Numbered from the stretch's first letter, positions 10,739 through 48,176 are shown. The stretch: DNA of 64,000 bases from Octopus sinensis (GCF_006345805.1 NC_043014.1:38378001-38442000); one strand, 5' to 3'. Notes: generated from the sequence alone by a model not told the origin. Program-made: numbers and translations.

Positions 10739-11345
10739 TTTGAACGTTTTGATAAATCGATCCTTGAAAACAATCTTAAGAAGCTTCTTTTTGTATTAGG
10801 GATGGAACAAGGTTGGGATTAAGAGAGATTATTACGGCAAAATAGAATTTTTAAAAAAAGTATCTTATTTTTATCAAGTCACCATGATGTCATATTAGAT
10901 AATTCTCTGTTTCTTTGGTACATTATACTCTTAATCGAACATTACAATTAATTTTTAATTAACGAAAAATTACAAAAAAAACCACTCAACTTGGTTAAGT
11001 TTGTTTTGCAGCAGAAATTTACGAAAAAACGCTGTTAACTGCTAACGGTGATAACCTTAGAAGTTCCTCCTGTAATATTTATTCAAGGGAACAAATTAAT
11101 GTATGAGAAATTATAATACCTGGCTTAACTGATCAGAGATAAGTAGCATCCGAGTAAAATTATTTTAACAGTTTTGTAATCTCAGAGAATATTTTAAAAT
11201 ATAAATAATTCTATCGAGTTATTTATCCAATCGTGTGTTTTTATATTATTTAAATTAATTATTTAAATTAATTAAATTTACATAATTTTTAAGCACCGAA
11301 TCTAAGGGAGAGAACTGAAATGCTGTCTTTGGTTTGTTTACAAAC
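10739..11345. promoter_or_regulatory. Putative bidirectional promoter region ASB3/SPATA24
   Basis: 607 bp free of recognisable repeats between divergent start codons, in an otherwise repeat-saturated window. Confidence 0.55.
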
Positions 11346-12062
11346 ATGGCGTCGGATTGTGGTGAAAGTTCGGCGCTGACTCTAACAAGTGTTACCACTG
11401 GTTACGAAGTGATACAGCAACAGTTTCAAGATTTATTGCAACTCAAAGACTTTTTAATTAACAAAACTACGGAATTATCCTCCAAAGCTTCTGGACAGTC
11501 GAACAGTCGCAATGAAAGTGCTACCATTATGTCAGATTTTGATAACTCGAAATCATCAACTTTTAAGGGGTCCGAAATATTGGATTCAGTGGTTTCCTGG
11601 AAACAATATGAATCAGTAGCCCAGGAATTGGAGATCGAGAAATTAAACCATTGCCGAACCAAAACACGCTGCTGTGAGCTAACTGATCATTTAGAAATAT
11701 CACAGCAGCAAATAGCCGCTCTACAGAAGCAGATACAAGACGACCGTGAAAGTTTCCGAAGAATTTTAAACTCCTTGAATAAATCTGTGAAACTTGAAAA
11801 TGAAAAGAAATGTGAATTGGAAACCCGATGTAGTCAGCTTGAAGAGCAGAATAAGAAACTGGATGAAAAATTGGCTTCTAGAATCTCGGAAGTTAAAAAG
11901 CTCAAAGGAAACTTGCTAAAACAGAAAGAATTACAGAGCCGTAATTTGATGGAACTAGAAGTGAACCGATGCCAACAAGACTACATTTCAAATTATCTTG
12001 ATCAGTGTCATCAACCACGTATCAAGAAGTGTGAGCAAAATTATGTAACGAGCAGAAAATAA
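11346..12062 (+). CDS. SPATA24: Single-exon SPATA24-like coiled-coil protein, 238 aa
   Basis: ATG in aacATGG context; uninterrupted ORF. Segment VSWKQYESVAQELEIEKLNHCRTK...ENEKKCELETRCSQLE...QQDYISNYLDQCH aligns without gaps to recalled human SPATA24 VSKEEFQAVEKKLVEEKAAHAKTK...ESSKKDQLITKCNEIE...QQESYMAQVLDQKH. Confidence 0.8.
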   Translation: MASDCGESSALTLTSVTTGYEVIQQQFQDLLQLKDFLINKTTELSSKASGQSNSRNESATIMSDFDNSKSSTFKGSEILDSVVSWKQYESVAQELEIEKLNHCRTKTRCCELTDHLEISQQQIAALQKQIQDDRESFRRILNSLNKSVKLENEKKCELETRCSQLEEQNKKLDEKLASRISEVKKLKGNLLKQKELQSRNLMELEVNRCQQDYISNYLDQCHQPRIKKCEQNYVTSRK

Positions 12063-22558: not shown

Positions 22559-22639
22559 TTTATTCACAATCATATTCCATATACATTTATATATTCATTT
22601 CATTATCATCTTCGTTGTCTTGTGCTTATATCCTTTATT
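22559..22639 (-). terminator. Candidate poly(A) signals of the peroxidase gene
   Basis: AATAAA overlapping the stop codon (22639-22634) and a second at 22564-22559. Confidence 0.45.
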
Positions 22640-22845
22640 GCTGAGCTCGATTTCGACACACTTGTACTTGGGTTTCTTCTGCTACCCCGTCGCAAGAACA
22701 AGGACCATCAACTGGGGCGGCACAAGCTCTAGTTCGACTCATCTGGCCATCAGCGCAAGCAGTCCAAGCAGACCAAACACCGTAACTTCTCACCAGAGCG
22801 CAGACATCAGCAGATGGCAAACTGTTACAGTTGACCAAGGGGTTA
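22635..22845 (-). CDS. Peroxidase-family gene, exon 14 (end of peroxidase domain, TSP1-like tail, stop)
   Basis: ttttttcaacag|, 211 nt. Encodes NPLVNCNSLPSADVCALVRSYGVWSAWTACADGQMSRTRACAAPVDGPCSCDGVAEETQVQVCRNRAQQ*. The 14 exons sum to 2796 nt = 931 aa plus stop. Confidence 0.9.
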
Positions 22846-24357: not shown

Positions 24358-24460
24358 GTGTCAGAGATTTGCAGAAAAGCATCAGCTTGGATCTGTTCGA
24401 TGTTGGTGTTGTCACAGATTAATCGAGACATTGTAACGTTTCTTACAGCAGCCAAAGTAT
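24358..24460 (-). CDS. Peroxidase-family gene, exon 13
   Basis: ttccattgtag|...ACAC|gtaagt, 103 nt. Encodes DTLAAVRNVTMSRLICDNTNIEQIQADAFLQISD. Confidence 0.93.
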
Positions 24461-24789: not shown

Positions 24790-24956
24790 CGAGCGATAAC
24801 TGGTTGGGTCCGGCATTTTCGTACCAGAATCTGTCTCCGACTTTCAAAGCTTGGAACTGTCGTGCTGTAATGCAAGCTAATGTAGGACCAACATCGCCAC
24901 CTGCAACTTGGATTTCGGACACACCACCACTCCATACGTCAATATCGGCAACATTC
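24790..24956 (-). CDS. Peroxidase-family gene, exon 12
   Basis: atttttcag|...CTCG|gtaata, 167 nt. Encodes NVADIDVWSGGVSE...VGPTLACITARQFQALKVGDRFWYEN. Confidence 0.95.
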
Positions 24957-25395: not shown

Positions 25396-26608
25396 CTAGC
25401 AGAATTGCCCGGCGATCCTCGGGGCTGAATTGCTTGAAAGTACTGCTAATGATTGCACTGAATTATGATGACTATTCAGGCAAATATTGATATAAGTTTA
25501 CGGTGGGAGATAAGGACTTAACGATCAAACGTGTGCCATTGCATTGTTTTGGGGGAACCAAATTTCTAATGAGCATTATAGGGGCACCAACTTTAAGTTT
25601 GAGAATGTGTGGTGGTAGTCCGGGGGGCTCAAAGGAATTGAGTACCTCTATAGGATAGTTGATGACGTCCTCTGGGTCAGAAGTTGTATCGATAGACTTA
25701 TATACATAGACATCCCCAGCAATGAATTTTAGCATTTCATCATTAATATGGTGAACAGTTTTATTCCTCGGGGCCAGAATAGCCCTTTGGCCAATCCAAT
25801 CCATTTTCTGATAATTAGCTTGTAGATCTGGGAACACTGCATCTCTGAGATCAGAAGGCGTTTTAACAATGGTACAAATGGAATCGATGGCAATATTACC
25901 ATTTTCATCCCCTGGTATTTTGCCTTCGCCGAGTGCAAAAGTACGTACTGGTGGGGGTCGACTTCTTTGATTAAGCCCCTTCAAATTGATGCCCCAGAAT
26001 GGCTGCTTTCCAATGAGAGAAACAAGTAAGAGATAAAAGATATGATAAGAGAAAGTTACCCGAGGAATTAGCATACGTTAAAGACGAGCTAATTTCGATT
26101 TTTGATGGTAACTTGGTTGCAGGAATGTCTGTGCGTTTAAGAAGCTGTTTCGCAACTATGTGGTTATGGATTGACCGCCCCCTTTTTACGTAGCACTGCA
26201 CAACAATTTCAATAAGGTCTGATCTCCGATCAAGGGATAACTTTTGCACTTCTTCCTGTGAAGTAGGTCATGGACACCCTTATAATTTTAAGACTTCAAA
26301 ATATATTTAATATAAACTCAAGGCACCCTTTGTGTTGCGGAATCGTTGCATTCCTGAAAATATTTCCGTAACATGGAGTTCCGTAACGAGAAACCCACTT
26401 ATCACTGGCTTTCTCGTTGCATAGACGTTAAAGTGAGAGGAATATATTTTGCGTCACGAAATCCTACACCGCGGCAAAGTTCTCAAGAATGCCATACTGT
26501 GATAAAGCGAAGGGTGCCTATATTTCATTCCATGTTTATATTCGTAGAAAGGGCTGGAAAGTTACAAGGAATAATATTTATAAATCTGATAATATGAATA
26601 TCGTTAGA
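25396..26608 (-). mobile_element. Internally deleted Helitron with PIF1-type helicase fragment, in peroxidase intron 11
   Basis: 5' A|TC at 26608; 3' GC-rich hairpin then CTAG|T at 25396. ORF 25472-26074 contains RAILAPRNKTVHHIN...YPIEVLNSFEPPGLPPHILKLKVGAPIMLIRNL...CNGTRLIV (Helitron helicase). Confidence 0.9.
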
Positions 26609-26947: not shown

Positions 26948-27160
26948 TCGTAAAGTTGTGAGAGAAGGTTTTGATTTTCTTCAGTGTGATCTACGAGGTC
27001 TGTGAAGTTTTCAGGAACAGACAATCCACACCACTGTCTCCAAGCTGTGTATGATGGGAGTCCATTATCACGTCCTTGCTGGATATTTAGTGCAGCTAAA
27101 TCCCAGCCATTTCCTGGGGCTGTTTCAACTAATCTGTTGGTTAGATCTTCTGTCATCAGT
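26948..27160 (-). CDS. Peroxidase-family gene, exon 11
   Basis: tttttttgtag|...ACGA|gtgagt, 213 nt. Contains DLAALNIQQGRDNGLPSYTAWRQWCGL. Confidence 0.95.
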
Positions 27161-27340
27161 CTACAAAAAAAAAAACGTAATTTAGTACATATAATGGCTA
27201 CCATAACTGTTGTTATTTAGTTCAGCTCCGTTGGAACCGAGAAGACTTATGGTCAAAGGCATTCTAGCAGTTACAGTCTTATATGTCTTCATTTCTTTTA
27301 ACTATTTTGTTACCATATTTCATTTCAAATACTCTGCGCT

Positions 27341-27494
27341 TTTTTGTTGTGTCTGGGAAGAGTCATTCTCTTATAGTGCCTTATCATTTAACACACTCAC
27401 CGGTAAAGTTTCCACTCATGAGTAGAAACTTTACCGGTGAGTGTGTTAAATGATAATGTACTAAAAGAGAATGACTCTCCTCAGACGCAAAAAA
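27341..27494. repeat. Loopless near-perfect palindrome, ~77-bp arms
   Basis: Centre ...tttccactca|tgagtagaaa... at 27418/27419; only a handful of mismatches across the arms. Confidence 0.9.
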
Positions 27495-28044
27495 TATGCT
27501 TCAACACACGAACTCACATAAAGAATCTTGCAAACCAAATCCAAAAGTGAAATACACTGCTTCTATTTCTATAAAATAACAAACCTGTTCATTTATAACG
27601 TAATTATTCTTAAACGCTCTAACAAAATGTAAAAGACGAAAAGAATCGAACTATGTCTCCCGACAGTAACTTATAAAAAGAAAAATTATTTTGAAAATTT
27701 CTTCGGTTTTCAAAGTTTTAACACAAAATAATTACTTTAAACAAGTAATTACGTGTCGATAAAGAAATAGAAAACAGGTGTTTCTAAAATTTGTATTTAG
27801 GTGAAAGATAGGTTTAAATTAACGTAAATCAAGACGGCAGTAATATATTTACTTATTTCTCGGTCGTTGAGAGAAAGGTTTTAATGTAGCTTCTGTCGGA
27901 AATCCGCTTTTAAACTTTCAAAATGATACACTTACTCCTTCAGAAGGCCGCAAGTTCTCGGTGTCAGGAATGAAGTTCTTTGACAAAAAGAACCTCAATA
28001 TCGACTATAAAAATACTCAAACACTATAAGGGAGATGTAATTAT

Positions 28045-28272
28045 ACCTATTTCTTTACTGCCTACAAGGGGCTACACAGAGGGGACAAACAAGGACAGAT
28101 AAACGGATTAAGTCGATTATATCGACCCCAGTGCGTAACTGGTACTTAATTTATCGACCCCGAAAGGATGAAAGGCAAAGTCGACCACGGCGGAATTTGA
28201 ACTCAGAACGCAACGGCAGACGAAATACCGCTAAGCATTTCGCCCGGCGCGCTAACGATTCTGCCAGCTCGC
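28045..28272 (-). mobile_element. tRNA-derived SINE family C, representative copy
   Basis: Head gcgagctggcagaatcgttagc..gttctgagttcaaattccgcc, tail gtagtaaagaaataggtat. Many copies, e.g. about 345-570, 4178-4410, 18655-18862, 32570-34305, 61571-62460. Confidence 0.85.
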
Positions 28273-28433
28273 AGGGAGATGTAATTATACCGTTATTCGA
28301 TACTCGCTGAAACATCCCCTCGGAGGATGTTGTTTCAGCGGATATTGAATAACGCATCATGATAGGTTACACTATGTATGAAAACTCAAGCATCTTTGCT
28401 CTTAGCGCTATTATCCTCAACAAATGGTTTTAC

Positions 28434-28902
28434 CTGTCAACTTCTTGTGCCAAATCAGAGGTAAGTCCTCGGTAAACTAAAGTAGGGGCATCGGTTTCTC
28501 CATAGAAAACATCTGCGTTATAGTACAAGGAAATAAGAGCATTCTGAGTTTCTCCAATGGTAATAAGGCCTCTAATTCCGGAGTGACTGTAGATAATACC
28601 AGCGGCGCCGAAACCATTACGAATAGCAGGATTGATGTTGCCTATGTACAAGGAGTAACCCTCTGTAAGTGAGTTCAGATTGTAGGTGTTCATAAATTCA
28701 GGGCCGAGTACTTTGGGTAGATATTCGTCGTATGCAATGTGTTGCATCTCAGAAATGACGATTTTGCGAGCTTCTTGAAAGACGACTTCGTCGGTCCAAT
28801 CTGGGTGGCCGGTGCTCAGCGCGTTAGCTATGCGGTTGTGTTCTCGAAGGAAGAGGGTGTGTTGGGACATCATCATAGGTTGTACATTAACTCGGTTATC
28901 AC
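28434..28902 (-). CDS. Peroxidase-family gene, exon 10 (distal Arg, proximal His)
   Basis: cccctgcttcag|...ACAG|gtaaaa, 469 nt. Encodes GDNRVNVQP...HTLFLREHNRIA...FQEARKIVISEMQHIAYDEYLP...FGAAGIIYSHS. Confidence 0.97.
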
Positions 28903-29002
28903 CTGAAGCAGGGGAAAAACATAGCAAAAATAAAAGCAAACAAAAAGCATGTTAAAATGAGTGAAGTGTTATATTGATATGAAACAGTAATGGAAATAGA
29001 TA

Positions 29003-29229
29003 CAGGGCGCGGCAGAAAGGTTGCCCCGATTTCAATGGTTAATGAAAAGAACAAATACTTGAAGGTACAAGAAAAAACGTTCTCCACTCCAGGCAATGGT
29101 GGATACTTCCTAAAACGGAAAAAATGGCAAGTAATGAACTTCTTAGAAATCTAAGGTTTTTTCATGCATCTTCCGGTGTGTATTTTTTATTAATCATTGA
29201 AATCAGGGTGTCCTTTCTGCCGCACCCTG
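29003..29229. mobile_element. Tc1/mariner-type MITE, peroxidase intron 9
   Basis: TA|CAGGGCGCGGCAGAAAGG ... CCTTTCTGCCGCACCCTG|TA. The imperfect TIR extends to about 45 bp. Confidence 0.8.
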
Positions 29230-29513
29230 TATATTGTAAATGTATTGATGACGTAAACTTGTATCGGATTCCTCGAAATTCAAGATTTTACTTTATAAAT
29301 CACGTATTTATTACAGAAAAGGCCTGTTAGTCAAGTGTCATTGTTATTTAGCAATTGCCTGGAGCAGTGGAGTAGTGGTTAAGGTTGGACTACCCGAACA
29401 CTATGTGTTCATGTATTGAAACTCGCTCGCAAAGGATTTTATATATCTGCCTATCTCTCCCTTTCTTTCAATCTATCTATCTCGTCCCACATATGCACAC
29501 ACACTTGCACACA

Positions 29514-29551
<38 letters not shown>

Positions 29552-29746
29552 CACACACACACACACACACACATACATAAATGCGAATAGAGTGGGAGAA
29601 AAGCGGTAGAGGTAGAAACATGGTCCTTTACGTATGTAGCAGAACAAACAACTGAATTAAAGAATTCCATTTGATGGGGTTTTTTTATGACACACATCAT
29701 CCAAATATTGAAGTAAATTGGTATTTTTCATTGACAAATCATTTTA

Positions 29747-29785
<39 letters not shown>

Positions 29786-30686
29786 CGCACACACACACAG
29801 AGAGAGGCTTTCACACAGTTATCGTTTAGCAGATTCACTGACAAGTCATTTGTCGGCCTGGAGCTATAGTAGAAAGCGCTTGCTCAAGGTGCCGCGCAGT
29901 GGGACCGAACCCAAAGTCACGTGTTTGCAAAGCAAGTTACTTAAGTATACCACCTATAAGGAAAGATCAGTGCTCAAGATCCTTTAAAGGGTTTCCGATA
30001 ATGTTGGAAGAAAGGGAGGAAGGTATTCTAGTCCCGGAGACCTGACCCCAATGTTTACAACAGAGTCGACTCCGCTGAAGGCCACGAAGGGTCAGGTGGG
30101 GGTGTTAAACCGGGTGACGCTTGGAGTCTACCAATTAAGTTGGCCGTAATGAGATTTGAACCCAGAACCCTCAGAGGTGGAACGAATATCGCAAGGTATT
30201 TGGTCCCACACTCCAACGTTTCTGCCAGTCTACTGCTCTAGTTCTGATACTTTATATATCGACCCCACCGAAGGATAAAATGCCTGATTAACTTCGGTGG
30301 ATTTGAACTCTGAACGCAAGGACCCTGAATAATTACTGCAGTGCATTTCATCGACGTCCCTAAGGTGAGTCCACATTACACTGTAAGGAGCATAAGGATG
30401 AAGCATAAGGATAATTTCCCCGGTTTCTCTGATATATATACACCTCCCTGCACGGGTCGCTAGTCCGTCGCAGGATTACTCATTTTTACCAGACGAGTGG
30501 ACTGGAGCAACGTGAAATGAAGTGCTTCGCTAAAAAAAACAAAAAAAACAACGAACCGCCCGGCTCAGGAATCGAAATACCAATCTAACGATCATGAATC
30601 CAACACTCTAACCACTAGGCCATGCGCTTCCCTAAAGACTGCTGATTCTGTTAAAATATACACTGATAGTTAAGAGAATAACCCAC

Positions 30687-30785
30687 CTCCAATGAAGCAG
30701 AGGTTTCCTTCAGAGGCAAGACAGAATGTGGTGTTAGACTGGGGCAGAAGGTCGAGATCATCAGTTGAGGTTGATCTCATTAGTC
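30687..30785 (-). CDS. Peroxidase-family gene, exon 9
   Basis: tatatttgcag|...GGAG|gtgggt, 99 nt. Encodes GLMRSTSTDDLDLLPQSNTTFCLASEGNLCFIG. Confidence 0.92.
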
Positions 30786-31513
30786 CTGCAAATATACAAG
30801 AAAAAAAAATTTAAATCGATCTCATAAGAACGAATACAAATTATATATACATACACGGGTACGTACGCATAAATAGAAATACTCTCTCTCTCACACAAAC
30901 ACAAGGAAAAGACATGATAGGCATAACATACAGTTTAAACTAGTCGTTTCCTACGTGCGTTTCGCCATTGTGGATAGTTGCATCTTCTGCGATATGTATT
31001 CATAGTGCATGGCTGTATTTCCGTGACTTTATTGGAAGTAGATTGGGTGCTGATACTCTTCACGTGGACCTTTATATATTCACCTGTAGCAGTCGTACAT
31101 CAGACAGCACACTCAGGAACTACTATATATATATAATGACTTTTAAACACCAATGATTCATTTCTCAATGTTAATTATTGGTCCATTTATTATCTTCTCT
31201 TTCTCTTTCTGTGTATATATATATGTATGTATGTATGCATGTATGTATGCATGTATGTATGTATGTATGCTATACAGATAGATATATGTATGTTTTTATT
31301 AATTTTTTTGTTTCAGTCATTTAACTGCCGCCATGCTGGAGCACCGCCTTTAGTCGAACAAATCGACCCCACGACTTATTCTTTGTAAGCTTAGTATTTA
31401 TTCTATCGGGCTGTCTTGCCGAACCGCCAAGTCACGGGGACGTAAACACACCAGCATCGCTTGTCAAGCGATGCTGGGGGGACAAACACAGACACACAAA
31501 CACATACATACGT

Positions 31514-31571
<58 letters not shown>

Positions 31572-31733
31572 GGCGGGCTTCTTTCAGTTTCCGTCTACCA
31601 AATCCACTCACAAGGCTTTGGTCGACCCGAGACTATAGTAGAAGACACTTGCCCAAGGTGCCACGCAGTGGGACTGAACTCAGAACCATGTGGTTGGTAA
31701 GCAAGCTACTTACCACACAACCACTCCTACATG

Positions 31734-31765
<32 letters not shown>

Positions 31766-31987
31766 TGTATGTATGTATATATGTATGTTGTTATGTGTGC
31801 GTGGATATGCATACGCACGAGTGTGTGAACAAAACGAAAGTAGCACTCGATTCAGCCCCACATTACTATCAAGTTTCTTGGATGTAGGACATGTCTACTT
31901 CATCGGATATTCCGAGGAGGCATTTATCAAAAGGGGCCACCACATGCACTCTCCCTCCCCCAACTCACCCACAAACATAAAACTTAC

Positions 31988-32089
31988 CACCAGTCATTGT
32001 CCTCAGTGTGGTTTGTCTGGTCAAATCAGAACCATACACCTGAGATGCATCTATGAAGCTAGTCGCACCGTTCAACTGTTCGCGTGGAC
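31988..32089 (-). CDS. Peroxidase-family gene, exon 8 (Ca-binding loop)
   Basis: catatttcag|...GGTG|gtaagt, 102 nt. Encodes GPREQLNGATSFIDASQVYGSDLTRQTTLRTMTG. Confidence 0.95.
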
Positions 32090-33459
32090 CTGAAATATGA
32101 TAACGAAAGAAACTGTTTTACAAACTGTTACACACATCAACAAAACGACATTCATGATACTGATTTCAAATTTCGGCACAAGGCCAGCAATTTAAGGGGG
32201 AGAGACTAAGTCGATTACATCGACCCCAGGGCTCAACTGGTACTTATTTCATTGACCCTGAAAGAATGAAAGTTAAAATCGACCAGGGTCTCTAGAATCA
32301 GTAAGGAGAAACGATGAGCCAATTCTTCGTCAGGTTTTCTACAACTTTCTCACCAAGATTACTATTGCACTTTTGAAGCCACAAAGATTCATAAATTAGA
32401 AATAAGTAAATAAATACATATACATCGCATCTGGACATTTGAAATGCTTGTCGAAACTAAAGCTGCTGTTAGCAAGCAGCATCTAAATTCGTGAGTTGTT
32501 TTGCTATTTGCTTTTTATATTTTTCGAAAAAAAGCAACATTTTTATTAATTTTTCCTCAGACAAATATTATACATAATCTTTTCTACTCTAGTCACAAGG
32601 CCCGACATTTTGGGGAGAGGGCCAGTCGATTAGGTCGATCCCAGTACGCATCTGGAACTTTATTTATCAACCCCGAAAGGATAAAAGGCAAAGCCGACCC
32701 GGGCGGAATTTGAACTCAGAGCGTAAAGACAGGCGAAATACCGCTAAGCATTTCGCCCCGTGTGCTAACGTTTCTGCCAGCTCGCCGCCTTAAAGATTAT
32801 ACATAATCTTTTCTACTCTAGGCAGAAGGTCTGAAATTTTTGGGGAGGGGACCAGTCGATTAGGTCGATTCCAGTACGCAAATGGAACTTAATTTATCGA
32901 CCCCGAAAGGATAAAAGGCAAAGTCGACCTCGGCGGAATTTGAACTCAGAACGTAGACAGACGAAATACTGCTAAGCATTTCGCCTAGCGTGTTAACATT
33001 TCTACCAGTTCGCCGCCTTAAATATTATAAATAATTTTTTCTACTCTAGGCAGAAGGTCTGAAATTTTGGGGGAGGGGGCCAGTCGATTAGATCGACCCC
33101 AGTAGGCAACTAGTACTTAATTTTTCGACTCCGAAAGGATGAAAGGCAAAGTCTGGGTGGAATTTCAACTCAGAACGTAAAGAAAGACGAAATACCTATT
33201 TCTTTACTACCCACAAGGGGCTAAACACAGAGAAGACAAACAAGGACAGACAAACGGATTAAGTCGATTATATCGACCCCAGTGCGTAACTGGTACTTAT
33301 TTAATCGACCCCAAAAGGATGAAAGGCAAAGTCGACCTCGGCGGAATTTGAACTCAGAACGTAACTTCAGACGAAATACGGATACGCATTTCGCCCGGCG
33401 TGCTAACGTTTCTGCCAGCTCGCCGCTTTAAAGATTATAAATAATGTAAGCATACTTAC

Positions 33460-33575
33460 CCAAAGCGCAGGAAAGTGGGGGAGTGGCTAGGCTACGGGTG
33501 TATGCCATGCATGTTCTACTGTATTGAGCGAAAAAGGGATCGTCTTCTGGGATGGCGATAGGAAAGCAGATGTCG
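33460..33575 (-). CDS. Peroxidase-family gene, exon 7
   Basis: atcttttcag|...TTGG|gtaagt, 116 nt. Encodes DICFPIAIPEDDPFFAQYSRTCMAYTRSLATPPLSCAL. Confidence 0.95.
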
Positions 33576-35772
33576 CTGAAAAGATAAGAAATGATTTTTT
33601 AAAATTATTGTTACCGGAGGGGTAGGCTGAACAAAGTCGTTCAATATCGGAGCCATTAAAACATCAACGATATTCGTATTGCTTTCAAATTTTAGCACAA
33701 GGCCAGCAACTTCTGGTTAGGGGTAAGTCGATTACATCGACCCCAGTGCTCAATTGGTGCTTATTTTATCGACACCTCGAAAGGATGAAAGGCGGAATTT
33801 GAACTCAGCACGTAAAGACTGACGAAATGCCGCTAAGCATTTTGCCCGGCGTGCCATCGATTCTGCCAGCTCACCGTCTTCTTATCTACTATAGGTACAA
33901 GGCCTGAAATTTACATTGACCCCAGTGCTCAACTGGTACTTATTTTATCGACCCCGAAAGACTGCAAGGCAAAGTTGATCTCGGTGGAATTTGAATTCAG
34001 AACGTAAAGACGGACAAAATGCCGCTAAACGTTTTGCGCGGTGTACCAACGATTCTCCCAGCTCGCCGCCTTATTTCTTTATTGCCCACAGGGGGCTAAA
34101 TATAGAGGGGACAAACAAGGACAGACAAAGGGATTAAGTCGATGACATCGACCCCAGTGCGTAACTGGTACTTAATTTATCGACCACGAACGGATGAAAA
34201 GCAAAGTCGACCTCGGCGGAATTTGAACCCCGAACGTAAAGACAGGCGAAATACCGCTAAGCATCGCGCCCGGTGTGCTAACGATTCTGCCAGCTCGCCG
34301 CCTTACATCAACAATATTCATATCCAAGTTTGTTTTGGTATGAGAGGGATACAATTTTTTAAAAATATGAACTATCGCGTTACATGGGACAAGCCAAAGC
34401 AATAACTTGAATTTAGCACCGTAACCCAGAATGCTCATTAATTTATTGCCTCGTGTTTCCGTTTAATTACAGCAAAAGGCGGCGAATTCATATACCATTG
34501 ACCTCTTCATGGGATCGTTGAATACTTATTGGTTCCTATCATGTAAATTTCTATATTTAAAATTAAAACGTATATTTTATCTTTTACTTGTTTCAGTCAT
34601 TAGACTGCGACCATGCTAGGGTACTGTCTTGAAGAATTTCTCGTCGAATGTATCGACCCCAGTACTTTTATTCTTAGCCTGATACTTATTCTATCGGTCA
34701 CTTTTGCCGAACCGATTTTAACAAGAAATATTTGAAGAAATTTAATGAAACTACTCAACGAAATTGATAAAGAACAATAAAAATTCAGTGGTATTATATT
34801 GGTATAGTTGGACTGCTTAACGTGAAATATGTGTGGTAAATGCAAGTTATTGCATCGATATTTAGTTGAGGATCATTGAGTAAAATTACTACACTCTTCC
34901 AGATTCAGTTCGTTAACAATTCAGCCTTCTCAGGTGTTTATCAATTACATAGAAACCTCAAAGATCAATATTGATAACTTTGCCGATTACTGAATTTCAG
35001 TATTCAGCTGTAAATTCTCACCTGTTTATAACTAAGTGGAGCGTATCTTTTGAGAATTAAGTGCCTCGAAAAGAAACAAAGTGCATTGGCGGAAACGTCA
35101 GCTTCTTAACCATACACGCTTCTCATATAACACTGGGTGATTGTTGTTTAGACCTCCAGGTCAATTCTGATCAAGCGTTTCAGCATGGATCAATGAATCA
35201 CCCCTCGAAAGATGAGATGTGATTCATTGATCCATCTTCTCCTCATAAAATACCGGGTGTTGTTGTTATGACCCAGGCAGTCTCTCAAAGGACGGGGTGT
35301 GATTCATTGATCCATCGTCCCAGTTATACTGTATCTCTCTCTCTCTACCTAACTGAAGACCATTAAGTCGCTCAATCAACTGAATTTATACTCGTGAAAT
35401 TAACGTGTTAGCGGTTGAGTGTTCCGCAAACATTTGTATCTTTAATGTCATTCTCAGACCAAATCAGTGTGATGCAATGTGACATGGCTGGAGAAAATAA
35501 AGAATGTGTAGTGACTAGCGATCTATCATGGCGAATCCCGGACAGAAGGGTCACACAGGAGAACTAGGGAGAAGAGGAGGTAACAAAGTAGTGGTGATCC
35601 TAAAACGAAGGTGCGCGTGCGTGTGTATAAGAGAGGTTTTATGTGTGTGTGAAAGAGGGCTGGTGCTCTTGAGAGCAGATGCACGGTCCACGGAACGTGC
35701 TCTGGCAAGGACGATGTAGGTCATATATATAGTCCAGAGAGAAGAGGGGGAGGGAGGGAGAGAGAGATAGAG

Positions 35773-35815
<43 letters not shown>

Positions 35816-35999
35816 AAAGAATTGACTCTAGTAATGAATCGGTACTGTATTTATCGACCCCTAAAGGATGAAAGGGAAATTTAATTTGAGAGGGTTTGGA
35901 ACACAGAGAGCCAGAGAGCTGAATCGAATTCCGTCAAGTGTTCAATCTGACGCTCTGCTAATTCCGTCTGTTCTTCACCTTCAATATGGTATTACTTAC

Positions 36000-36024
36000 A
36001 TGTCGTCAGTTTCACAGCAGTCAC
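36000..36024 (-). CDS. Peroxidase-family gene, exon 6 (25-nt microexon)
   Basis: ttcttcttcttttccaccag|GTGACTGCTGTGAAACTGACGACAT|gtaagt. Encodes GDCCETDDI. The phase 1-to-2 shift is required to join exons 5 and 7. Confidence 0.88.
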
Positions 36025-36459
36025 CTGGTGGAAAAGAAGAAGAAAATAGTCGTTATTTTATAAATGGATTAAACAACACATTATACATTTAGCAAAAGAA
36101 GCAAAATAATCATCATCTAAAGATACATTGCATATTCATATAAGGCCGTATATATTTGTACAAGATCGATTAAAAATCATATAAAACTAACTAACTAACA
36201 AACTAACTGACTAACTAATTAACTCTGTGTGTGTGTGTGTGTGAGAGAGAGAGACCAATTGTATTCATATAATAGCCTATATATAGGCGTAGGAGTGGCT
36301 TTGTGGTAAGTAGCTTGCTTACCAGCCACATGGTTCCGGGTTCAGTCCCATGCGTGGCACCTTGGGCAAGTGTCTGCTACTATAGCCTCGGGCCGACCAC
36401 AGTCTTGTGAGTGGATTTGGTAGGCGGAAACTGAAAGAAGCCCGTCGTATATATGTATG

Positions 36460-36528
<69 letters not shown>

Positions 36529-36795
36529 TTGTGTGTCTGTGTTTGTTCCCTCAACATCACTTGGCAACCGATGCTGGTGTGTTTACGTCCCCGTCACTTA
36601 GCGGTTCGGCAAAAGAGACCGATAGAATAAGTACAAGGCTTACAAAGAATAAGTCCTGGGGTCGATTTGCTCGACTAAAGGCGGTGCTCCAGCATGGCCA
36701 CAGTCAAATGACTGAAGCAAGTAAAAGAGTAAGAGAGAAAGATTTAAAGAGTATATAATTAAACAAAGTCCATTGAGGTTAAGGGAAGACCTTAC

Positions 36796-36981
36796 CACTT
36801 GTTGGCATAGCAGGATAATCTTGAAGATCGTGGTTGAGGAAGACACCGAACATTGTTAGCAGATGGGTAAAATCAGGATTGACGTTTTCTTGAGTACTGG
36901 CGCCATGGAATGTTGTACTAATCAATCGGGCTCCGGGAAGGTTTCCTCCATTAACACCGGTAGCACGAGGAGCGCTGAGAT
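36796..36981 (-). CDS. Peroxidase-family gene, exon 5 (distal His)
   Basis: tttctcaatag|...AGTG|gtaagg, 186 nt. Encodes DLSAPRATGVNGGNLPGARLISTTFHG...LLTMFGVFLNHDLQDYPAMPTS. Confidence 0.95.
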
Positions 36982-38281: not shown

Positions 38282-38496
38282 CGTCTTCGTAAATAGCTGG
38301 CAAATAACGATCGAAAGGAGTGTTTGATCGGCCAAGGTAGGGGAACAGAAGGTTGTTACAAGAGCCATCAGCAGAACGGTAAGGAACTGTAGCATCACAA
38401 GTTAAGGCTTCGACGAACGGACAATTCTCAACAAGTTCCAAGGGAGGCTGGACTGCAGGTAGAAGATTTTCTGCTGTGATAGCTCCATCGTCTAAC
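38282..38496 (-). CDS. Peroxidase-family gene, exon 4
   Basis: ttatttttcag|...GACG|gtaagt, 215 nt. Contains YRSADGSCNNLLFPYLGRSNTPFDRYLPAIYED, the canonical N-terminal motif of animal haem peroxidases. Confidence 0.95.
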
Positions 38497-39558: not shown

Positions 39559-40219
39559 AGCTGCTGAATCAGTCTTCCAGTGACCACAAATACAAGACCG
39601 GTTTCAGCAATGGCCAACTGGTTATCCGGCAGGACTACAGCTGCCTCTCCGTTCACGACAGTGTCATTGGCAGCGGCAGCAGCAGCAGCGGCAGCGGCAG
39701 CAGCTGCAGCAGCATCGGCAGCGGCAGCGGCTGCAGCAGCAGCAGCAGCATCTTCGGCAGTGACAGCGGCAGCAGCAGCGGCGGCGGCACCGGCAACAGC
39801 AGCGGCAGCAGCAGCGTTGGCGGTGGCGGCCTCAGCAGCAGTACTGGCGGCTAGGGCAGCAGCTTCGGCAGCAACAGCAGCGGCGGCGGTGGCGTTGGCA
39901 ACGGCTTCGGGGTCGTCAGGGTTGGCAGCAGCAATGGCAGCAGCTTCTTCAGCAGCGGCAGCGGCGGCTATGGCAGCATCGGCAGCGGCGGCAGCAGCAG
40001 CATTTGCAGCTTCAGCGTTTGCGGTTTCAGCAGCAGCGGTGTTTGCAGCGACAGCAGCAGCAGCTTGAGCCGCAGCAGCGGTTCTCGCAGTAGCGGCAGC
40101 AGCAGCAGCTGGGGTGAGGTTTCCAATATCGATTACTGCGTTACCAGTTCCAGCATTATTGGCTCCATTGGCTCCATTGGCTGTATTGTCTCCATTGCGT
40201 GTATTGGCTCCTGCTTGAT
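39559..40219 (-). CDS. Peroxidase-family gene, exon 3 (Asn/Gly- and alanine-rich)
   Basis: Acceptor caacttccag|, donor AGCT|gtaagt, 661 nt, phase 1/2 fits both neighbours. Open throughout, with mixed GCN codons. Confidence 0.85.
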
Positions 40220-40233
40220 CTGGAAGTTGAAAG

Positions 40234-40292
<59 letters not shown>

Positions 40293-40502
40293 CAATAAGG
40301 CAGTGAACTGGCAGAATCGTTAGTACACCGGGTGAAATGCTTAGGGGTATCTCATCTACTGCTACGCTCTGAGTTCAGATTCCGACCCTTGCCTTTCATC
40401 ATTTCGGGGATGATAAATTAAGTACCAGTGAAACACTAGAGTCGATCTAATCGATTAGTCCCAGCTCCCCAAATTTCAGGTTTTGTGCTTTAAGCAGAAA
40501 GG

Positions 40503-40556
<54 letters not shown>

Positions 40557-41117
40557 GAGTGAGAGAGCAGTTCATGCCATCAAAGTGACACTGGGGTAAA
40601 ATATACGAAGCCCAATATACCCATCATGACTACCCGTCTGATAAGGGTACACCAGGCACATGCATCACAACCATATGTGCGCGACATGGTGATCTCATAT
40701 CAAGATAAACAGCACCTGACCTTGCAGGTGGGGCCCAGTTAGAATTTTCTTCAGGTTGAGTAGCCCATCCCGCTCAAAAGGTCCCTGAATAAGGGTTGTT
40801 TAAGGATGTTGAAAGAATCACCCATGTTTCCAGAGGTGAATTATTCAAACCCCAAAGAATCCCTCTCAACACATGGCTATGATGCTTCCCCACTACTTCT
40901 GCTCGTGATCAGAGATGCACATATCGTCAGCCATTAAGGGACATGCTCAACTGGTTAAAGTCAAACAACTGACAAGCAAATCTGTGGTATTGAGCAGAAT
41001 ATTTGCTGTAGCCCATCTTTTATACCAAGACAAAACAATGTACTTGATAACACTTCCAATCAGTTAAAATCAGAAGCCATGAGAGCCACTGCCTGGTACT
41101 GCATCAGGGCATTTTTA

Positions 41118-41174
<57 letters not shown>

Positions 41175-41395
41175 CAATAAGGCAGTGAACTGGCAGAATC
41201 GTTAGTACACCGGGTGAAATGCTTAGGGGTATCTCATCTACTGCTACGCTCTGAGTTCAGATTCCGACCTTGCCTTTCATCATTTCGGGGATGATAAATT
41301 AAGTACCAGTGAAACACTAGAGTCGATCTAATCGATTAGTCCCAGCTCCCCAAATTTCAGGTTTTGTGCTTTAAGCAGAAAGGATTATTATTATA

Positions 41396-41430
<35 letters not shown>

Positions 41431-42022
41431 TATTATTGAGTGAGAGAGCAGTTCATGCCATCAAAGTGACACTGGGGTAAAATATACGAAGCCCAATATA
41501 CCCATCATGACTACCCGTCTGATAAGGGTACACCAGGCACATGCATCACAACCATATGTGCGCGACATGGTGATCTCATATCAAGATAAACAGCACCTGA
41601 CCTTGCAGGTGGGGCCCAGTTAGAATTTTCTTCAGGTTGAGTAGCCCATCCCGCTCAAAAGGTCCCTGAATAAGGGTTGTTTAAGGATGTTGAAAGAATC
41701 ACCCATGTTTCCAGAGGTGAATTATTCAAACCCCAAAGAATCCTCTCAACACATGGCTATGATGCTTCCCCACTACTCTGCTTCGTGATCAGAGATGCAC
41801 ATATCGTCAGCCATTAAGGGACATGCTCAACTGGTTAAAGTCAAAACAACTGACAAGCAAATCTGTGGTATTGAGCAGAATATTTGCTGTAGCCCATCTT
41901 TTATACCAAGACAAAACAATGTACTTGAAACACTTCCAATCAGTTAAAATCAGAAGCCATGAGAGCCACTGCCTGGTACTGCATCAGGGCATTTTATTAT
42001 TATTATTATTATTATATTATTA

Positions 42023-42056
<34 letters not shown>

Positions 42057-42260
42057 CATTAAGGCAGTGAGCTGGCAGAATCGTTAGTACACCGGGTGAA
42101 ATGCTTAGGGGTATCTTATCTACTGCTACGCTCTGAGTTCAGATTCCGACCTTGCCTTTCATCATTTCGGGGATGATAAATTAAGTACCAGTGAAACACT
42201 AGAGTCGATCTAATCGATTAGTCCCAGCTCCCCAAATTTCAGGTTTTGTGCCTTTAGCCG
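40293..42260. repeat. 882-bp tandem duplication (about 2.2 units)
   Basis: Unit starts at 40293, 41175 and 42057. Unit = SINE C + (ATT)n + 556-bp element + (ATT)n. Confidence 0.9.
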
Positions 42261-42265
42261 AAATG

Positions 42266-42340
<75 letters not shown>

Positions 42341-44711: not shown

Positions 44712-44932
44712 TGTTTTGCCGTTCATCAATGGCATCTGATGTTCCGGATCTTCCTCCCGATCTTCTTCCGCCATGCCTTCGTCCGCTACAAGATCCGTAA
44801 CGTCTAAAAAGACATTTGTTTCGTACTATTCTCGATGCTTTTGCGTAGACACTTTGGCATTGTTTATCTTGGAGAGGTGTCAAGCATAAAACTATGCAAG
44901 GTAGAATCGCCAGTAATAAGATTAAAGATGGA
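44712..44932 (-). CDS. Peroxidase-family gene, exon 2 (signal peptide plus basic Arg/Gly segment)
   Basis: Strong acceptor cttttttctcttttccttttcag|, donor AACA|gtatgt, 221 nt, phase 2/1. Encodes RPSLILLLAILPCIVLCLTPLQDKQCQSVYAKASRIVRNKCLFRRYGSCSGRRHGGRRSGGRSGTSDAIDERQN. Confidence 0.8.
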
Positions 44933-45107: not shown

Positions 45108-45680
<573 letters not shown>

Positions 45681-48168: not shown

Positions 48169-48176
48169 CGAATCAT
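48169..48176 (-). CDS. Peroxidase-family gene, coding exon 1 (ATG ATT CG, 8 nt)
   Basis: aaccATGATTCG|gtgagat. Phase 2 matches exon 2 and gives signal peptide MIRPSLILLLAILPCIVLC. TATA-like box 55 nt upstream. Confidence 0.7.

What the first reader, a model, noticed from the sequence alone, without database searches (positions are those of the whole stretch)
26948..36981. Intact peroxidase gene with a systematically rewired haem pocket
Seen: all 14 exons splice in frame with no stops. Against the peroxidase-cyclooxygenase consensus (MPO numbering), GQFxDHD is GVFLNHD (Gln91>Val, ester-forming Asp94>Asn) and RxNEQP is RVNVQP (ester-forming Glu242>Val). AFRFGH is GIIYSH (propionate-binding Arg333>Ile), and LNIQRGRDHG is LNIQQGRDNG (Arg424>Gln, His>Asn). 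Retained: distal His95, Arg239, proximal His336, Asn421, Asp96 and the TSFIDAS calcium loop. Established: Asp94 and Glu242 make the covalent haem links, and Gln91 takes part in halide binding. Inference: either a non-covalent-haem enzyme with a more hydrophobic pocket and different chemistry (e.g. phenol/catechol cross-linking or melanogenesis), or a secreted pseudo-peroxidase. Its 931-aa size recalls cephalopod ink-gland and light-organ peroxidases, but I could not verify orthology.
Basis: partly seen in the sequence, partly recalled or inferred. Interest (0 to 1): 0.85.

Follow-up and report, generated by a model that had tools for sequence, protein, structure and literature searches.

The report
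Octopus ink peroxidase with altered haem pocket
This is the intact, expressed octopus copy of the known cephalopod ink-gland / light-organ peroxidase. Its unusual haem pocket is real, but it is an old signature shared by the cuttlefish and bobtail-squid enzymes sequenced in the 1990s, not a new oddity of this gene.

Summary
A minus-strand gene of 14 GT-AG coding exons encodes 931 aa with no stop. Against myeloperoxidase (MPO) it carries Q91V, D94N, E242V, R333I, R424Q and H428N, and keeps His95, Asp96, Arg239, His336, Asn421 and the TSFIDAS calcium loop. The stated coordinates cover only exons 5-11; the gene spans 22635-48176.

It is the octopus orthologue of the Sepia officinalis "melanogenic peroxidase" (O18504, 926 aa) and the Euprymna scolopes light-organ peroxidase (Q24926, 891 aa). 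The clade has 100% NJ bootstrap support and one shared architecture: signal peptide, Ala-rich acidic region, peroxidase domain, TSP1-like tail. All orthologues carry the same V-N-H-D / R-V-Q / G-I-I-Y-S-H pocket, plus F407V.

A published O. vulgaris ink proteome ranks a transcript-derived protein, matching over its first ~390 residues, fourth in ink. The gene is under purifying selection (dN/dS about 0.15-0.36 within Octopus).

Best reading: a secreted, active haem peroxidase with non-covalently bound haem, suited to one-electron oxidation of melanin precursors rather than chloride oxidation. That chemistry is inferred, not tested.

The remaining interest is that its biochemical meaning seems undiscussed and fits poorly with the "halide peroxidase" label.

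The parts
48169..48176 (-). Coding exon 1 (ATGATTCG: Met-Ile-Arg, with the Arg codon split across the intron)
   Evidence: Matches MIR... of P0002 and the transcript ORF ...RRTTMIRPSL in the PMC10142993 supplement. GT donor.
44712..44932 (-). Exon 2: hydrophobic signal peptide (res 4-20, mean KD 2.8), Cys-rich and Gly/Arg-rich N-terminal segment
39559..40219 (-). Exon 3: Ala-rich acidic low-complexity region (res ~96-282; 62% Ala over res 96-275; 1 K/R, 17 D/E), followed by a conserved helix LAIAETGLVFVVTGRLIQQL
   Evidence: Retained as one exon in the O. vulgaris transcript and in the Euprymna and Sepia sequences. The annotated model P0002 wrongly splices most of it out.
38282..38496 (-). Exon 4: start of the peroxidase domain (CxxxxxYRSADGSCNN)
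36796..36981 (-). Exon 5: distal-His helix GVFLNHD (V415 at 36842-36844, N418 at 36833-36835, H419 at 36830-36832, D420 at 36827-36829)
36000..36024 (-). Exon 6: 25-nt micro-exon (GDCCETDD)
   Evidence: Also present in O. vulgaris L003 and O. bimaculoides L004. Missed by the P0002 model.
33460..33575 (-). Exon 7 (DICFPIAIPEDDPFF...SCALG)
31988..32089 (-). Exon 8: calcium loop TSFIDAS (res 487-493, 32043-32063)
30687..30785 (-). Exon 9
28434..28902 (-). Exon 10: distal Arg helix RVNVQP (R548 at 28892-28894, V551 at 28883-28885) and proximal helix GIIYSH (I648 at 28592-28594, H651 at 28583-28585)
26948..27160 (-). Exon 11: V712 (MPO F407), LNIQQGRDNG (N726 at 27085-27087, Q729 at 27076-27078, N733 at 27064-27066)
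24790..24956 (-). Exon 12
24358..24460 (-). Exon 13: end of the peroxidase domain
22635..22845 (-). Exon 14: C-terminal TSP1-like domain (WSAWTAC..., res 885-926) and TAA stop
   Evidence: Pfam TSP_1 22.9 bits (cutoff 21.6) when scanned alone, but 17.2 bits, below the cutoff, within the full protein. The tail is shared with Sepia, Euprymna and paralogue P0007.

Best explanation
The gene encodes the octopus orthologue of the coleoid ink-gland / light-organ peroxidase (Sepia 'melanogenic peroxidase', Euprymna LO4 'halide peroxidase').

Shown here:
- It is intact and under purifying selection.
- It has a signal peptide, an Ala-rich acidic region, an LPO/MPO-fold peroxidase domain and a TSP1-like tail.
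- Its protein is abundant in octopus ink.

Inferred:
- It binds haem b through His651 without the two ester links, because Asp94 and Glu242 are Asn and Val.
- It still forms Compound I from H2O2 using the retained distal His419/Arg548 pair.
- It works as a one-electron (HRP-like) oxidase of phenolic/indolic donors, most plausibly 5,6-dihydroxyindoles during eumelanin polymerisation in ink-gland melanosomes.
- Lacking the ester links, the halide-binding Gln91 and both propionate-anchoring arginines, it should be a poor or null chloride oxidiser.
- The pocket was remodelled once, before the octopus-squid split, and has been held fixed since.
For: Gene integrity:
- 14 GT-AG exons, 931 aa.
- Pfam An_peroxidase E=2e-163.
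- An AlphaFold model of the 83%-identical Argonauta orthologue has pLDDT 92.5 and matches LPO/MPO at TM 0.86-0.89.

Orthology:
- NJ bootstrap is 1.0 for the clade and for its octopod and decapod halves.
- Sepia O18504 sits in the same 90% cluster as hit P0006.
- Same architecture and size.

Expression:
- The shown N-terminal ~390 residues of the 953-aa ORF Cluster-58773.132244 match this gene apart from small Ala/Asn-repeat length differences and NNIQ versus NNLL. They include 22 in-frame 5'UTR codons and the Ala-rich exon.
- That ORF is ranked 4th in O. vulgaris ink: 268 PSMs, 15 unique peptides, 35% coverage.
- Reviews place peroxidase in Sepia premelanosomes, where it polymerises DHI/DHICA (PMC4052311).

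Selection:
- dN/dS is 0.15-0.19 against O. vulgaris and 0.28-0.36 against O. bimaculoides.
- 327 of 545 domain columns are invariant across five orthologues.

Pocket:
- The catalytic His/Arg/His and calcium ligands are kept.
- 93 of 120 highly conserved family columns are kept in all orthologues.
- The clade-specific invariant replacements cluster on the distal helix (411, 415, 418, 422, 424), the Arg helix (544, 554-556), every neighbour of the proximal His (646-650) and F407 (712). That pattern indicates selected remodelling, not decay.
- The roles of Gln91, Asp94, Glu242 and Asn421 are as stated in PMC4420034 and PMC3533774.

From memory, not checked here: Weis et al. 1996 reported that an antibody to the Euprymna LO4 protein immunoprecipitated dianisidine peroxidase activity.
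Against: - No haem-binding, spectral or kinetic data exist for this protein or, as far as I could find, for any purified member of the clade.
- Both propionate-binding arginines and His428 are lost, and the proximal His partner (N/D/K) varies among orthologues. Haem affinity and reactivity could therefore be badly compromised.
- The Euprymna orthologue is described in the literature as a halide-dependent peroxidase (PMC3187790 and PMC6386654), which conflicts with my prediction of little or no chloride oxidation.
- Presence in ink shows secretion, not a role in melanin synthesis.
- The structural model is of an orthologue and carries no haem.
Confidence: 0.68

Rival explanations
1. Pseudo-peroxidase: the protein no longer binds haem or turns over H2O2. 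It serves instead as a structural or scaffolding component of ink or melanin granules, using the Ala-rich acidic region and the TSP1-like tail.
For: - Five haem-contact residues are lost: Q91, R333, F407, R424, H428.
- The proximal His partner is variable.
- Several cephalopod paralogues in the same radiation have clearly lost catalytic residues: P0007 lacks the distal His, P0010 both His, P0013/14 the proximal His.
- The protein is very abundant in ink, as a structural protein would be.
- There is precedent in the superfamily: DUOX peroxidase domains and PXDNL-type peroxidasins lack key residues.
Against: - The distal His, distal Arg, proximal His and calcium site are invariant in every orthologue across the coleoid split.
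- The replaced pocket residues are themselves frozen, which is not expected if the pocket were unused.
- From memory only: anti-LO4 antibody pulled down dianisidine peroxidase activity in Euprymna, and DAB-positive peroxidase is present in Sepia premelanosomes.
Confidence: 0.14
2. Conventional antimicrobial halide peroxidase: despite the substitutions it oxidises halides (Cl-/Br-/I-/SCN-) to hypohalous acids, as proposed for the Euprymna light-organ enzyme. On this reading its role in ink is chemical defence.
For: - The literature labels the Euprymna orthologue 'halide peroxidase' and credits it with hypohalous acid production (PMC3187790 and PMC6386654).
- Haem b peroxidases can oxidise iodide and thiocyanate, and seawater supplies bromide (general knowledge).
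Against: - Both ester-forming residues and the halide-binding Gln91 are absent. The reviews tie the special redox properties and halide binding to these features.
- There is no MPO-type Met243.
- Euprymna has 14 expanded peroxidases, six in the light-organ cluster (PMC6386654), so halide activity measured in extracts need not come from this protein.
Confidence: 0.15
3. Unexpressed or decaying gene copy: the open frame is fortuitous.
For: None found.
Against: - There is transcript and peptide evidence in ink.
- dN/dS is below 0.4.
- The 14-exon structure is conserved in O. vulgaris, O. bimaculoides and Argonauta.
Confidence: 0.01

Closest known systems
Sepia officinalis melanogenic (ink-gland) peroxidase, UniProt O18504 / CAA72331 (Gesualdo et al. 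1997)
   Same: - Orthologue (clade bootstrap 1.0), 926 vs 931 aa.
- Same architecture: signal peptide, Ala-rich region, peroxidase domain, TSP1-like tail.
- Same pocket: GVFFNHD, RVNVQP, GIIYSH, and V at the F407 position.
   Different: - About 70% identity in the domain.
- Position 421 is Asp (Asn here) and position 424 is Ala (Gln here).
Euprymna scolopes light-organ peroxidase-like protein LO4 / 'halide peroxidase' EsHPO, UniProt Q24926 (Tomarev 1993; Weis 1996)
   Same: - Orthologous clade and same architecture; 68% identity.
- Same V-N-H-D / R-V-Q / I-I-Y-S-H signature.
   Different: - It belongs to a squid-specific tandem expansion expressed in the light organ (PMC6386654).
- Positions 421/424/428 are K/A/I.
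- It is described as making hypohalous acid, which the pocket does not obviously support.
Octopus vulgaris annotated 'peroxidase' (P0002, assembly GCA_951406725.2) and ink-proteome entry Cluster-58773.132244
   Same: - Same locus: CDS 99.4% identical, dS 0.019.
- The transcript ORF of 953 aa equals 22 upstream codons plus a coding length within a residue or two of this 931-aa model, given small repeat-length differences.
   Different: - The annotated 719-aa model omits exons 6-7 and most of the Ala-rich exon.
- A few amino-acid differences (NNLL vs NNIQ, STST vs STPT, LISL vs LSSL).
- Introns are 93-98% identical, so the window is a sister species or a divergent haplotype.
Mammalian lactoperoxidase / myeloperoxidase (peroxidase-cyclooxygenase superfamily, family 1)
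   Same: - Same fold (TM 0.86-0.89).
- Distal His/Arg, proximal His, calcium site and disulfide cysteines are shared.
   Different: - No Asp94/Glu242 ester residues, no Gln91, no Arg333/Arg424/His428, no Phe407.
- Extra Ala-rich N-terminal region and TSP1-like tail.
Non-covalent haem members of the superfamily (cyclooxygenases, alpha-dioxygenases) and haem b plant peroxidases such as HRP (functional analogues)
   Same: - Predicted non-covalent haem b and one-electron oxidation of aromatic donors.
- From my own knowledge (title seen in the PMC4052311 reference list): d'Ischia et al. 1991 showed that peroxidase/H2O2 polymerises dihydroxyindoles to melanin.
   Different: - Sequence and fold are much closer to LPO/MPO than to COX (E 1e-85 vs 1e-13) and are unrelated to HRP.
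- This is a resemblance of mechanism only; it was not tested.

Membership tests
Animal haem peroxidase (Pfam PF03098; peroxidase-cyclooxygenase superfamily) | Profile match above the curated cutoff over the whole domain | tested here: met
   545 bits vs cutoff 25; profile positions 1-530 of 530
Animal haem peroxidase (Pfam PF03098; peroxidase-cyclooxygenase superfamily) | LPO/MPO-type alpha-helical fold | tested here: met
   AF2 model of the 83%-identical Argonauta orthologue, pLDDT 92.5; Foldseek to LPO/MPO gives TM 0.86-0.89, E about 1e-47. The window protein itself could not be submitted.
Animal haem peroxidase (Pfam PF03098; peroxidase-cyclooxygenase superfamily) | Distal His + distal Arg + proximal His | tested here: met
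   H419, R548, H651
Animal haem peroxidase (Pfam PF03098; peroxidase-cyclooxygenase superfamily) | Signature G-Q-x-x-D-H-D with the ester-forming Asp and halide-binding Gln | tested here: not met
   G-V-F-L-N-H-D. Consensus definition from PMC4420034.
Animal haem peroxidase (Pfam PF03098; peroxidase-cyclooxygenase superfamily) | Signature R-x-x-E with the ester-forming Glu | tested here: not met
   R-V-N-V
Animal haem peroxidase (Pfam PF03098; peroxidase-cyclooxygenase superfamily) | Distal calcium site (Asp96 + LTSFxDAS loop) | tested here: met
   D420; TSFIDAS at 487-493
Animal haem peroxidase (Pfam PF03098; peroxidase-cyclooxygenase superfamily) | Covalently bound, H2O2-reactive haem | not testable with these tools
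   Needs protein chemistry
Coleoid ink-gland / light-organ peroxidase orthogroup (Sepia O18504, Euprymna Q24926) | Monophyly with those proteins, mirroring the species tree | tested here: met
   NJ bootstrap 1.0 for the clade, for octopods and for decapods
Coleoid ink-gland / light-organ peroxidase orthogroup (Sepia O18504, Euprymna Q24926) | Architecture: signal peptide, ~180-aa Ala-rich acidic region, peroxidase domain, TSP1-like tail; ~890-930 aa | tested here: met
Coleoid ink-gland / light-organ peroxidase orthogroup (Sepia O18504, Euprymna Q24926) | Pocket signature V91 N94 V242 I332 I333 V407 | tested here: met
   Identical in all full-length members. Two further fragments carry IIYSH.
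Coleoid ink-gland / light-organ peroxidase orthogroup (Sepia O18504, Euprymna Q24926) | Protein present in ink / ink gland | tested here: met
   Literature data only: PMC10142993 supplements
Coleoid ink-gland / light-organ peroxidase orthogroup (Sepia O18504, Euprymna Q24926) | Peroxidase activity on dihydroxyindoles / dianisidine | not testable with these tools
   Enzymology needed
Halide-oxidising (MPO/LPO/EPO-type) peroxidases | Two haem ester links plus the Gln91 halide site | tested here: not met
   N418, V551, V415
Peroxinectins (family 3) | Integrin-binding KGD/RGD motif | tested here: not met
   No [RK]GD in the 931-aa protein

The most novel reading that the evidence does not exclude
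The coleoid ink / light-organ peroxidases would be a functionally distinct and so far unrecognised subclass of animal haem peroxidases. On this reading the ester links, the halide-binding Gln and the propionate-anchoring arginines were all given up before the octopus-squid split, in favour of a hydrophobic, non-covalent haem b pocket specialised for melanin-precursor (indole/catechol) radical chemistry. If so, the enzyme long cited as the hypohalous-acid source in the squid-Vibrio light organ cannot make HOCl, and that activity belongs to another paralogue.
Probability: 0.4. Interest if true: 0.55.

Novelty: already known. Interest (0 to 1): 0.33.

Why it matters
For genome annotation:
- This fixes the true structure of the octopus ink peroxidase gene. 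Published models drop two exons and the Ala-rich region.
- It identifies the gene as the orthologue of the Sepia and Euprymna enzymes.

For biology:
- The clade-wide, frozen remodelling of the haem pocket predicts non-covalent haem and loss of chloride oxidation.
- If confirmed, that would explain how cephalopods polymerise ink melanin with a peroxidase.
- It would also force a second look at the 'halide peroxidase' role given to the Euprymna orthologue in the squid-Vibrio symbiosis.

It is not a new gene or a new signature. The same residues are visible in sequences deposited in 1993 and 1997.

Tried and rejected
I modelled the Argonauta orthologue P0003 instead.
- Weis et al. 1996 (PMC19390) is not held. 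Its content and that of Small & McFall-Ngai 1999 are cited from memory only.
- One phrase search was rejected as too long.
- Searches for papers discussing the missing ester/Gln residues in cephalopod peroxidases found nothing. That shows absence in this library only.
- The first Biopython tree run timed out. A bootstrap run mis-specified the clade by omitting P0006. Both were corrected.
- The first exon-mapping script mishandled HSPs that ran into introns. It was redone exon by exon.
- dN/dS against Argonauta and Sepia is unreliable because dS exceeds 2 (saturated). Only the within-Octopus comparisons were used.
- A narrower protein search (exons 10-11) added only two 148-aa orthologous fragments.
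- No second peroxidase copy exists in the window; tblastn hits lie only in this gene.
- A TATA-like box just upstream of the ATG was considered as the promoter. It was dropped because the published transcript ORF reads through it.
- Peroxinectin membership was rejected: there is no KGD/RGD motif.

Full report
**What is in the sequence**

Six-frame inspection and tblastn with cephalopod homologues showed a peroxidase gene on the minus strand that extends well beyond the stated interval. Reading every junction gave 14 coding exons. All 13 introns are GT-AG. The CDS is 2796 nt = 931 aa with one terminal TAA.

The coding gene runs from 48176 to 22635.

Exon 6 is a 25-nt micro-exon (36000-36024). 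Exon 3 (39559-40219) encodes an Ala-rich acidic low-complexity stretch: 62% Ala over residues 96-275, with 1 K/R and 17 D/E.

Pfam finds An_peroxidase over residues 336-856 (545 bits, E=2e-163). The C-terminal TSP1 match reaches the curated cutoff only when the tail is scanned alone (22.9 bits against 21.6); it scores 17.2 bits within the full protein. The N-terminus is a hydrophobic signal peptide.

**Check of the residue claims**

I used a phmmer alignment to human MPO. Chain 5mfa_A numbering minus 118 gives mature MPO numbering.

| MPO residue | Window residue | Status |
|---|---|---|
| Gln91 | V415 | changed |
| Asp94 | N418 | changed |
| His95 | H419 | kept |
| Asp96 | D420 | kept |
| Arg239 | R548 | kept |
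| Glu242 | V551 | changed |
| Met243 | Q552 | changed |
| Arg333 | I648 | changed |
| His336 | H651 | kept |
| Asn421 | N726 | kept |
| Arg424 | Q729 | changed |
| His428 | N733 | changed |

The TSFIDAS calcium loop is residues 487-493 (window coordinates). The functional roles of these residues are as stated in two open reviews: Asp94 and Glu242 form the ester links, Gln91 is involved in halide binding, Asp96 and the loop bind calcium, and Asn421 hydrogen-bonds the proximal His (PMC4420034 and PMC3533774).

A systematic comparison went further. I compared the window protein with 106 non-cephalopod homologues.
- Of 120 columns conserved at 85% or more, 93 are kept in all orthologues.
- 16 are changed in at least four of the six orthologues compared.
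- The changed columns, and the clade-specific invariant replacements, cluster on the distal helix (411, 415, 418, 422, 424), the distal-Arg helix (544, 554-556), every neighbour of the proximal His (A-F-R-F-G becomes G-I-I-Y-S, 646-650), MPO Phe407 (V712) and W720.

**What it is**

The best database hits are:
- an O. vulgaris 'peroxidase' (P0002);
- O. bimaculoides and Argonauta proteins;
- the Euprymna scolopes light-organ 'peroxidase-like protein' Q24926 (891 aa, 68% identical).

A cluster look-up showed that hit P0006 shares a 90% cluster with the Sepia officinalis 'melanogenic peroxidase' O18504 (926 aa).

All of these carry GVF(L/F)NHD, RVNVQP, GIIYSH and Val at the Phe407 position. Two further 148-aa fragments have IIYSH.

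A neighbour-joining tree of the peroxidase domain gives bootstrap 1.0 for:
- this clade;
- its octopod half and its decapod half;
- its sister relation to a decapod paralogue (P0007);
- the monophyly of all cephalopod paralogues in the sample.

The architecture (signal peptide, ~180-aa Ala-rich acidic region, peroxidase domain, TSP1-like tail) is shared by the Sepia and Euprymna proteins. The window gene is therefore the octopus orthologue of the ink-gland / light-organ peroxidase. The pocket signature was already present in the common ancestor of octopods and decapods.

**Is it used?**

The supplements of an O. vulgaris ink proteome paper (PMC10142993) list a transcript-derived ORF, Cluster-58773.132244, of 953 aa.
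- Its shown N-terminal ~390 residues match this gene.
- It carries 22 in-frame upstream codons (SQQRQDFEQTCLDLRRTT...) that are found verbatim in the window upstream of the ATG.
- It includes the complete Ala-rich exon.
- It differs only by small Ala/Asn-repeat length differences and NNIQ versus NNLL, so its coding length is within a residue or two of the 931-aa model.
- It is the fourth-ranked protein in ink: 268 PSMs, 15 unique peptides, 35% coverage.

That supports exons 1-5 of the model, including the Ala-rich exon, and shows abundant secretion into ink.

I built codon alignments against the orthologous loci of O. vulgaris, O. bimaculoides, Argonauta and a Sepia-like transcript.
- dN/dS is 0.15-0.19 against O. 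vulgaris (dS 0.019).
- dN/dS is 0.28-0.36 against O. bimaculoides (dS about 0.1).
- Deeper comparisons are saturated at synonymous sites.

An AlphaFold model of the 83%-identical Argonauta orthologue is confident (pLDDT 92.5) and superposes on LPO/MPO at TM 0.86-0.89.

**How it most likely works**

Shown:
- The catalytic minimum for a haem peroxidase (distal His and Arg, proximal His, calcium site, fold) is intact and invariant across the clade.
- The residues needed for ester linkage and halide binding are absent.

Inferred:
- Haem b is bound non-covalently in a more hydrophobic pocket.
- H2O2 is still cleaved to Compound I.
- The enzyme acts by one-electron oxidation of aromatic donors, as HRP-type enzymes do.

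The Sepia literature summarised in PMC4052311 places peroxidase in premelanosomes, where it polymerises DHI/DHICA to eumelanin. That substrate class needs no ester-linked haem.

In most orthologues position 421 is Asp, the proximal partner typical of haem b plant and fungal peroxidases (my own knowledge), which fits this picture. In Euprymna it is Lys, which does not.

Positions 421/424/428 are free to vary while the rest of the pocket is frozen. This suggests that the propionate edge has lost its old constraints.

**Rivals**

- *Haem-less pseudo-peroxidase.* This would fit the loss of both propionate arginines and the presence of truly degenerate paralogues in the same radiation: P0007 lacks the distal His, P0010 lacks both His, and P0013/14 lack the proximal His. 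But those paralogues lost the very residues this clade has kept for the whole of coleoid history.
- *Conventional halide peroxidase.* This is what the Euprymna literature calls the orthologue. It is hard to reconcile with the pocket. Euprymna has 14 expanded peroxidases, six of them in the light-organ cluster, so extract activities are ambiguous.
- *Unexpressed pseudogene.* This is excluded.

**Context and novelty**

Losing both ester residues while keeping the catalytic triad is not rare. Twelve non-cephalopod homologues among the 120 hits do so, including lepidopteran and mussel proteins, and 24 more lack one. What is specific to the coleoid clade is the added loss of Gln91, Arg333, Phe407, Arg424 and His428.

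Within cephalopods there seems to be a series:
- P0008/P0012 have lost only the ester residues.
- The deeper-nested paralogues and the ink clade have also lost Arg333.

The gene, its orthologues and the signature are already in public databases. I found no paper in the held library that discusses the signature's biochemical meaning. The finding is therefore correct but ordinary as a discovery. It leaves one testable biochemical prediction.

**Limits**

- No haem chemistry can be tested here.
- The structure model is of an orthologue and contains no cofactor.
- The tree is distance-based.
- Statements about Weis 1996 and Small & McFall-Ngai 1999 are from memory.
- The source species is inferred only as a close relative of O. 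vulgaris (CDS 99.4% identical, introns 93-98%).

Noticed in passing
window 11334-12062 (+): A 242-aa ORF matches Pfam SPATA24 (E=1.6e-18). A SPATA24 gene lies in the same position and on the opposite strand next to the peroxidase in Argonauta (L002 20925-21635), so synteny is conserved.
   Followed up: partly
window 25472-26074 (-), inside intron 11: A 200-aa ORF carries a Pif1 2B helicase domain (E=1.8e-14). It is probably a Helitron/Pif1-like transposon fragment.
   Followed up: partly
window 40251-42276, intron 2 just upstream of exon 3: A unit of about 882 bp is repeated two to three times in tandem (97-100% identity between copies). At the syntenic place the O. vulgaris locus L003 has a single copy, to which both window copies align (a further copy lies elsewhere in the locus), so copy number differs between the two genomes.
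   Followed up: partly
window 45114-45650 (intron 1) and 32563-33196 (intron 7): A long (AT)n microsatellite (~276 copies; local GC 0.27) and a 228-bp tandem array (2.8 copies). A related SINE-like element recurs in several introns (e.g. near 28130, 33280, 34140).
   Followed up: no
L003 (O. vulgaris GCA_951406725.2) and L004 (O. bimaculoides GCA_001194135.2): The public gene models of the orthologues are defective. P0002 omits exons 6-7 and most of the Ala-rich exon, although the first two are intact in the DNA. The O. bimaculoides models are broken by assembly gaps (N runs at L004 8835-10467 and 15407-15771), and one (P0004) reads into an intron.
   Followed up: yes
proteins P0007, P0008, P0010-P0014 (cephalopod paralogues): The paralogues form a monophyletic cephalopod-specific radiation of peroxidase-like proteins with progressively degraded haem sites. 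Some have lost only the ester residues. Others have lost the distal His, the proximal His or both.
   Followed up: partly
window residues 554-556 (28868-28876) and 720: A Met-Met-Met run directly follows RVNVQP and is conserved in all orthologues; the middle Met replaces a Leu that is 99% conserved elsewhere. A clade-specific Trp precedes the DLAALN helix. The role of either is unknown. I wondered whether one of the Met residues contacts the haem.
   Followed up: no
window exon 3, 39603-40163: The ~180-aa Ala-rich acidic region is conserved in kind (50-62% Ala, almost no K/R) in Octopus, Sepia and Euprymna. It varies in length between the window and the published O. vulgaris transcript. Its function is unknown (propeptide or granule-matrix anchor?).
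   Followed up: partly
whole window vs L003: The window is collinear with the O. vulgaris chromosome OX597833.1 locus, but introns are only 93-98% identical and the protein differs at a few residues. It probably comes from a sister species or a divergent haplotype.
   Followed up: partly
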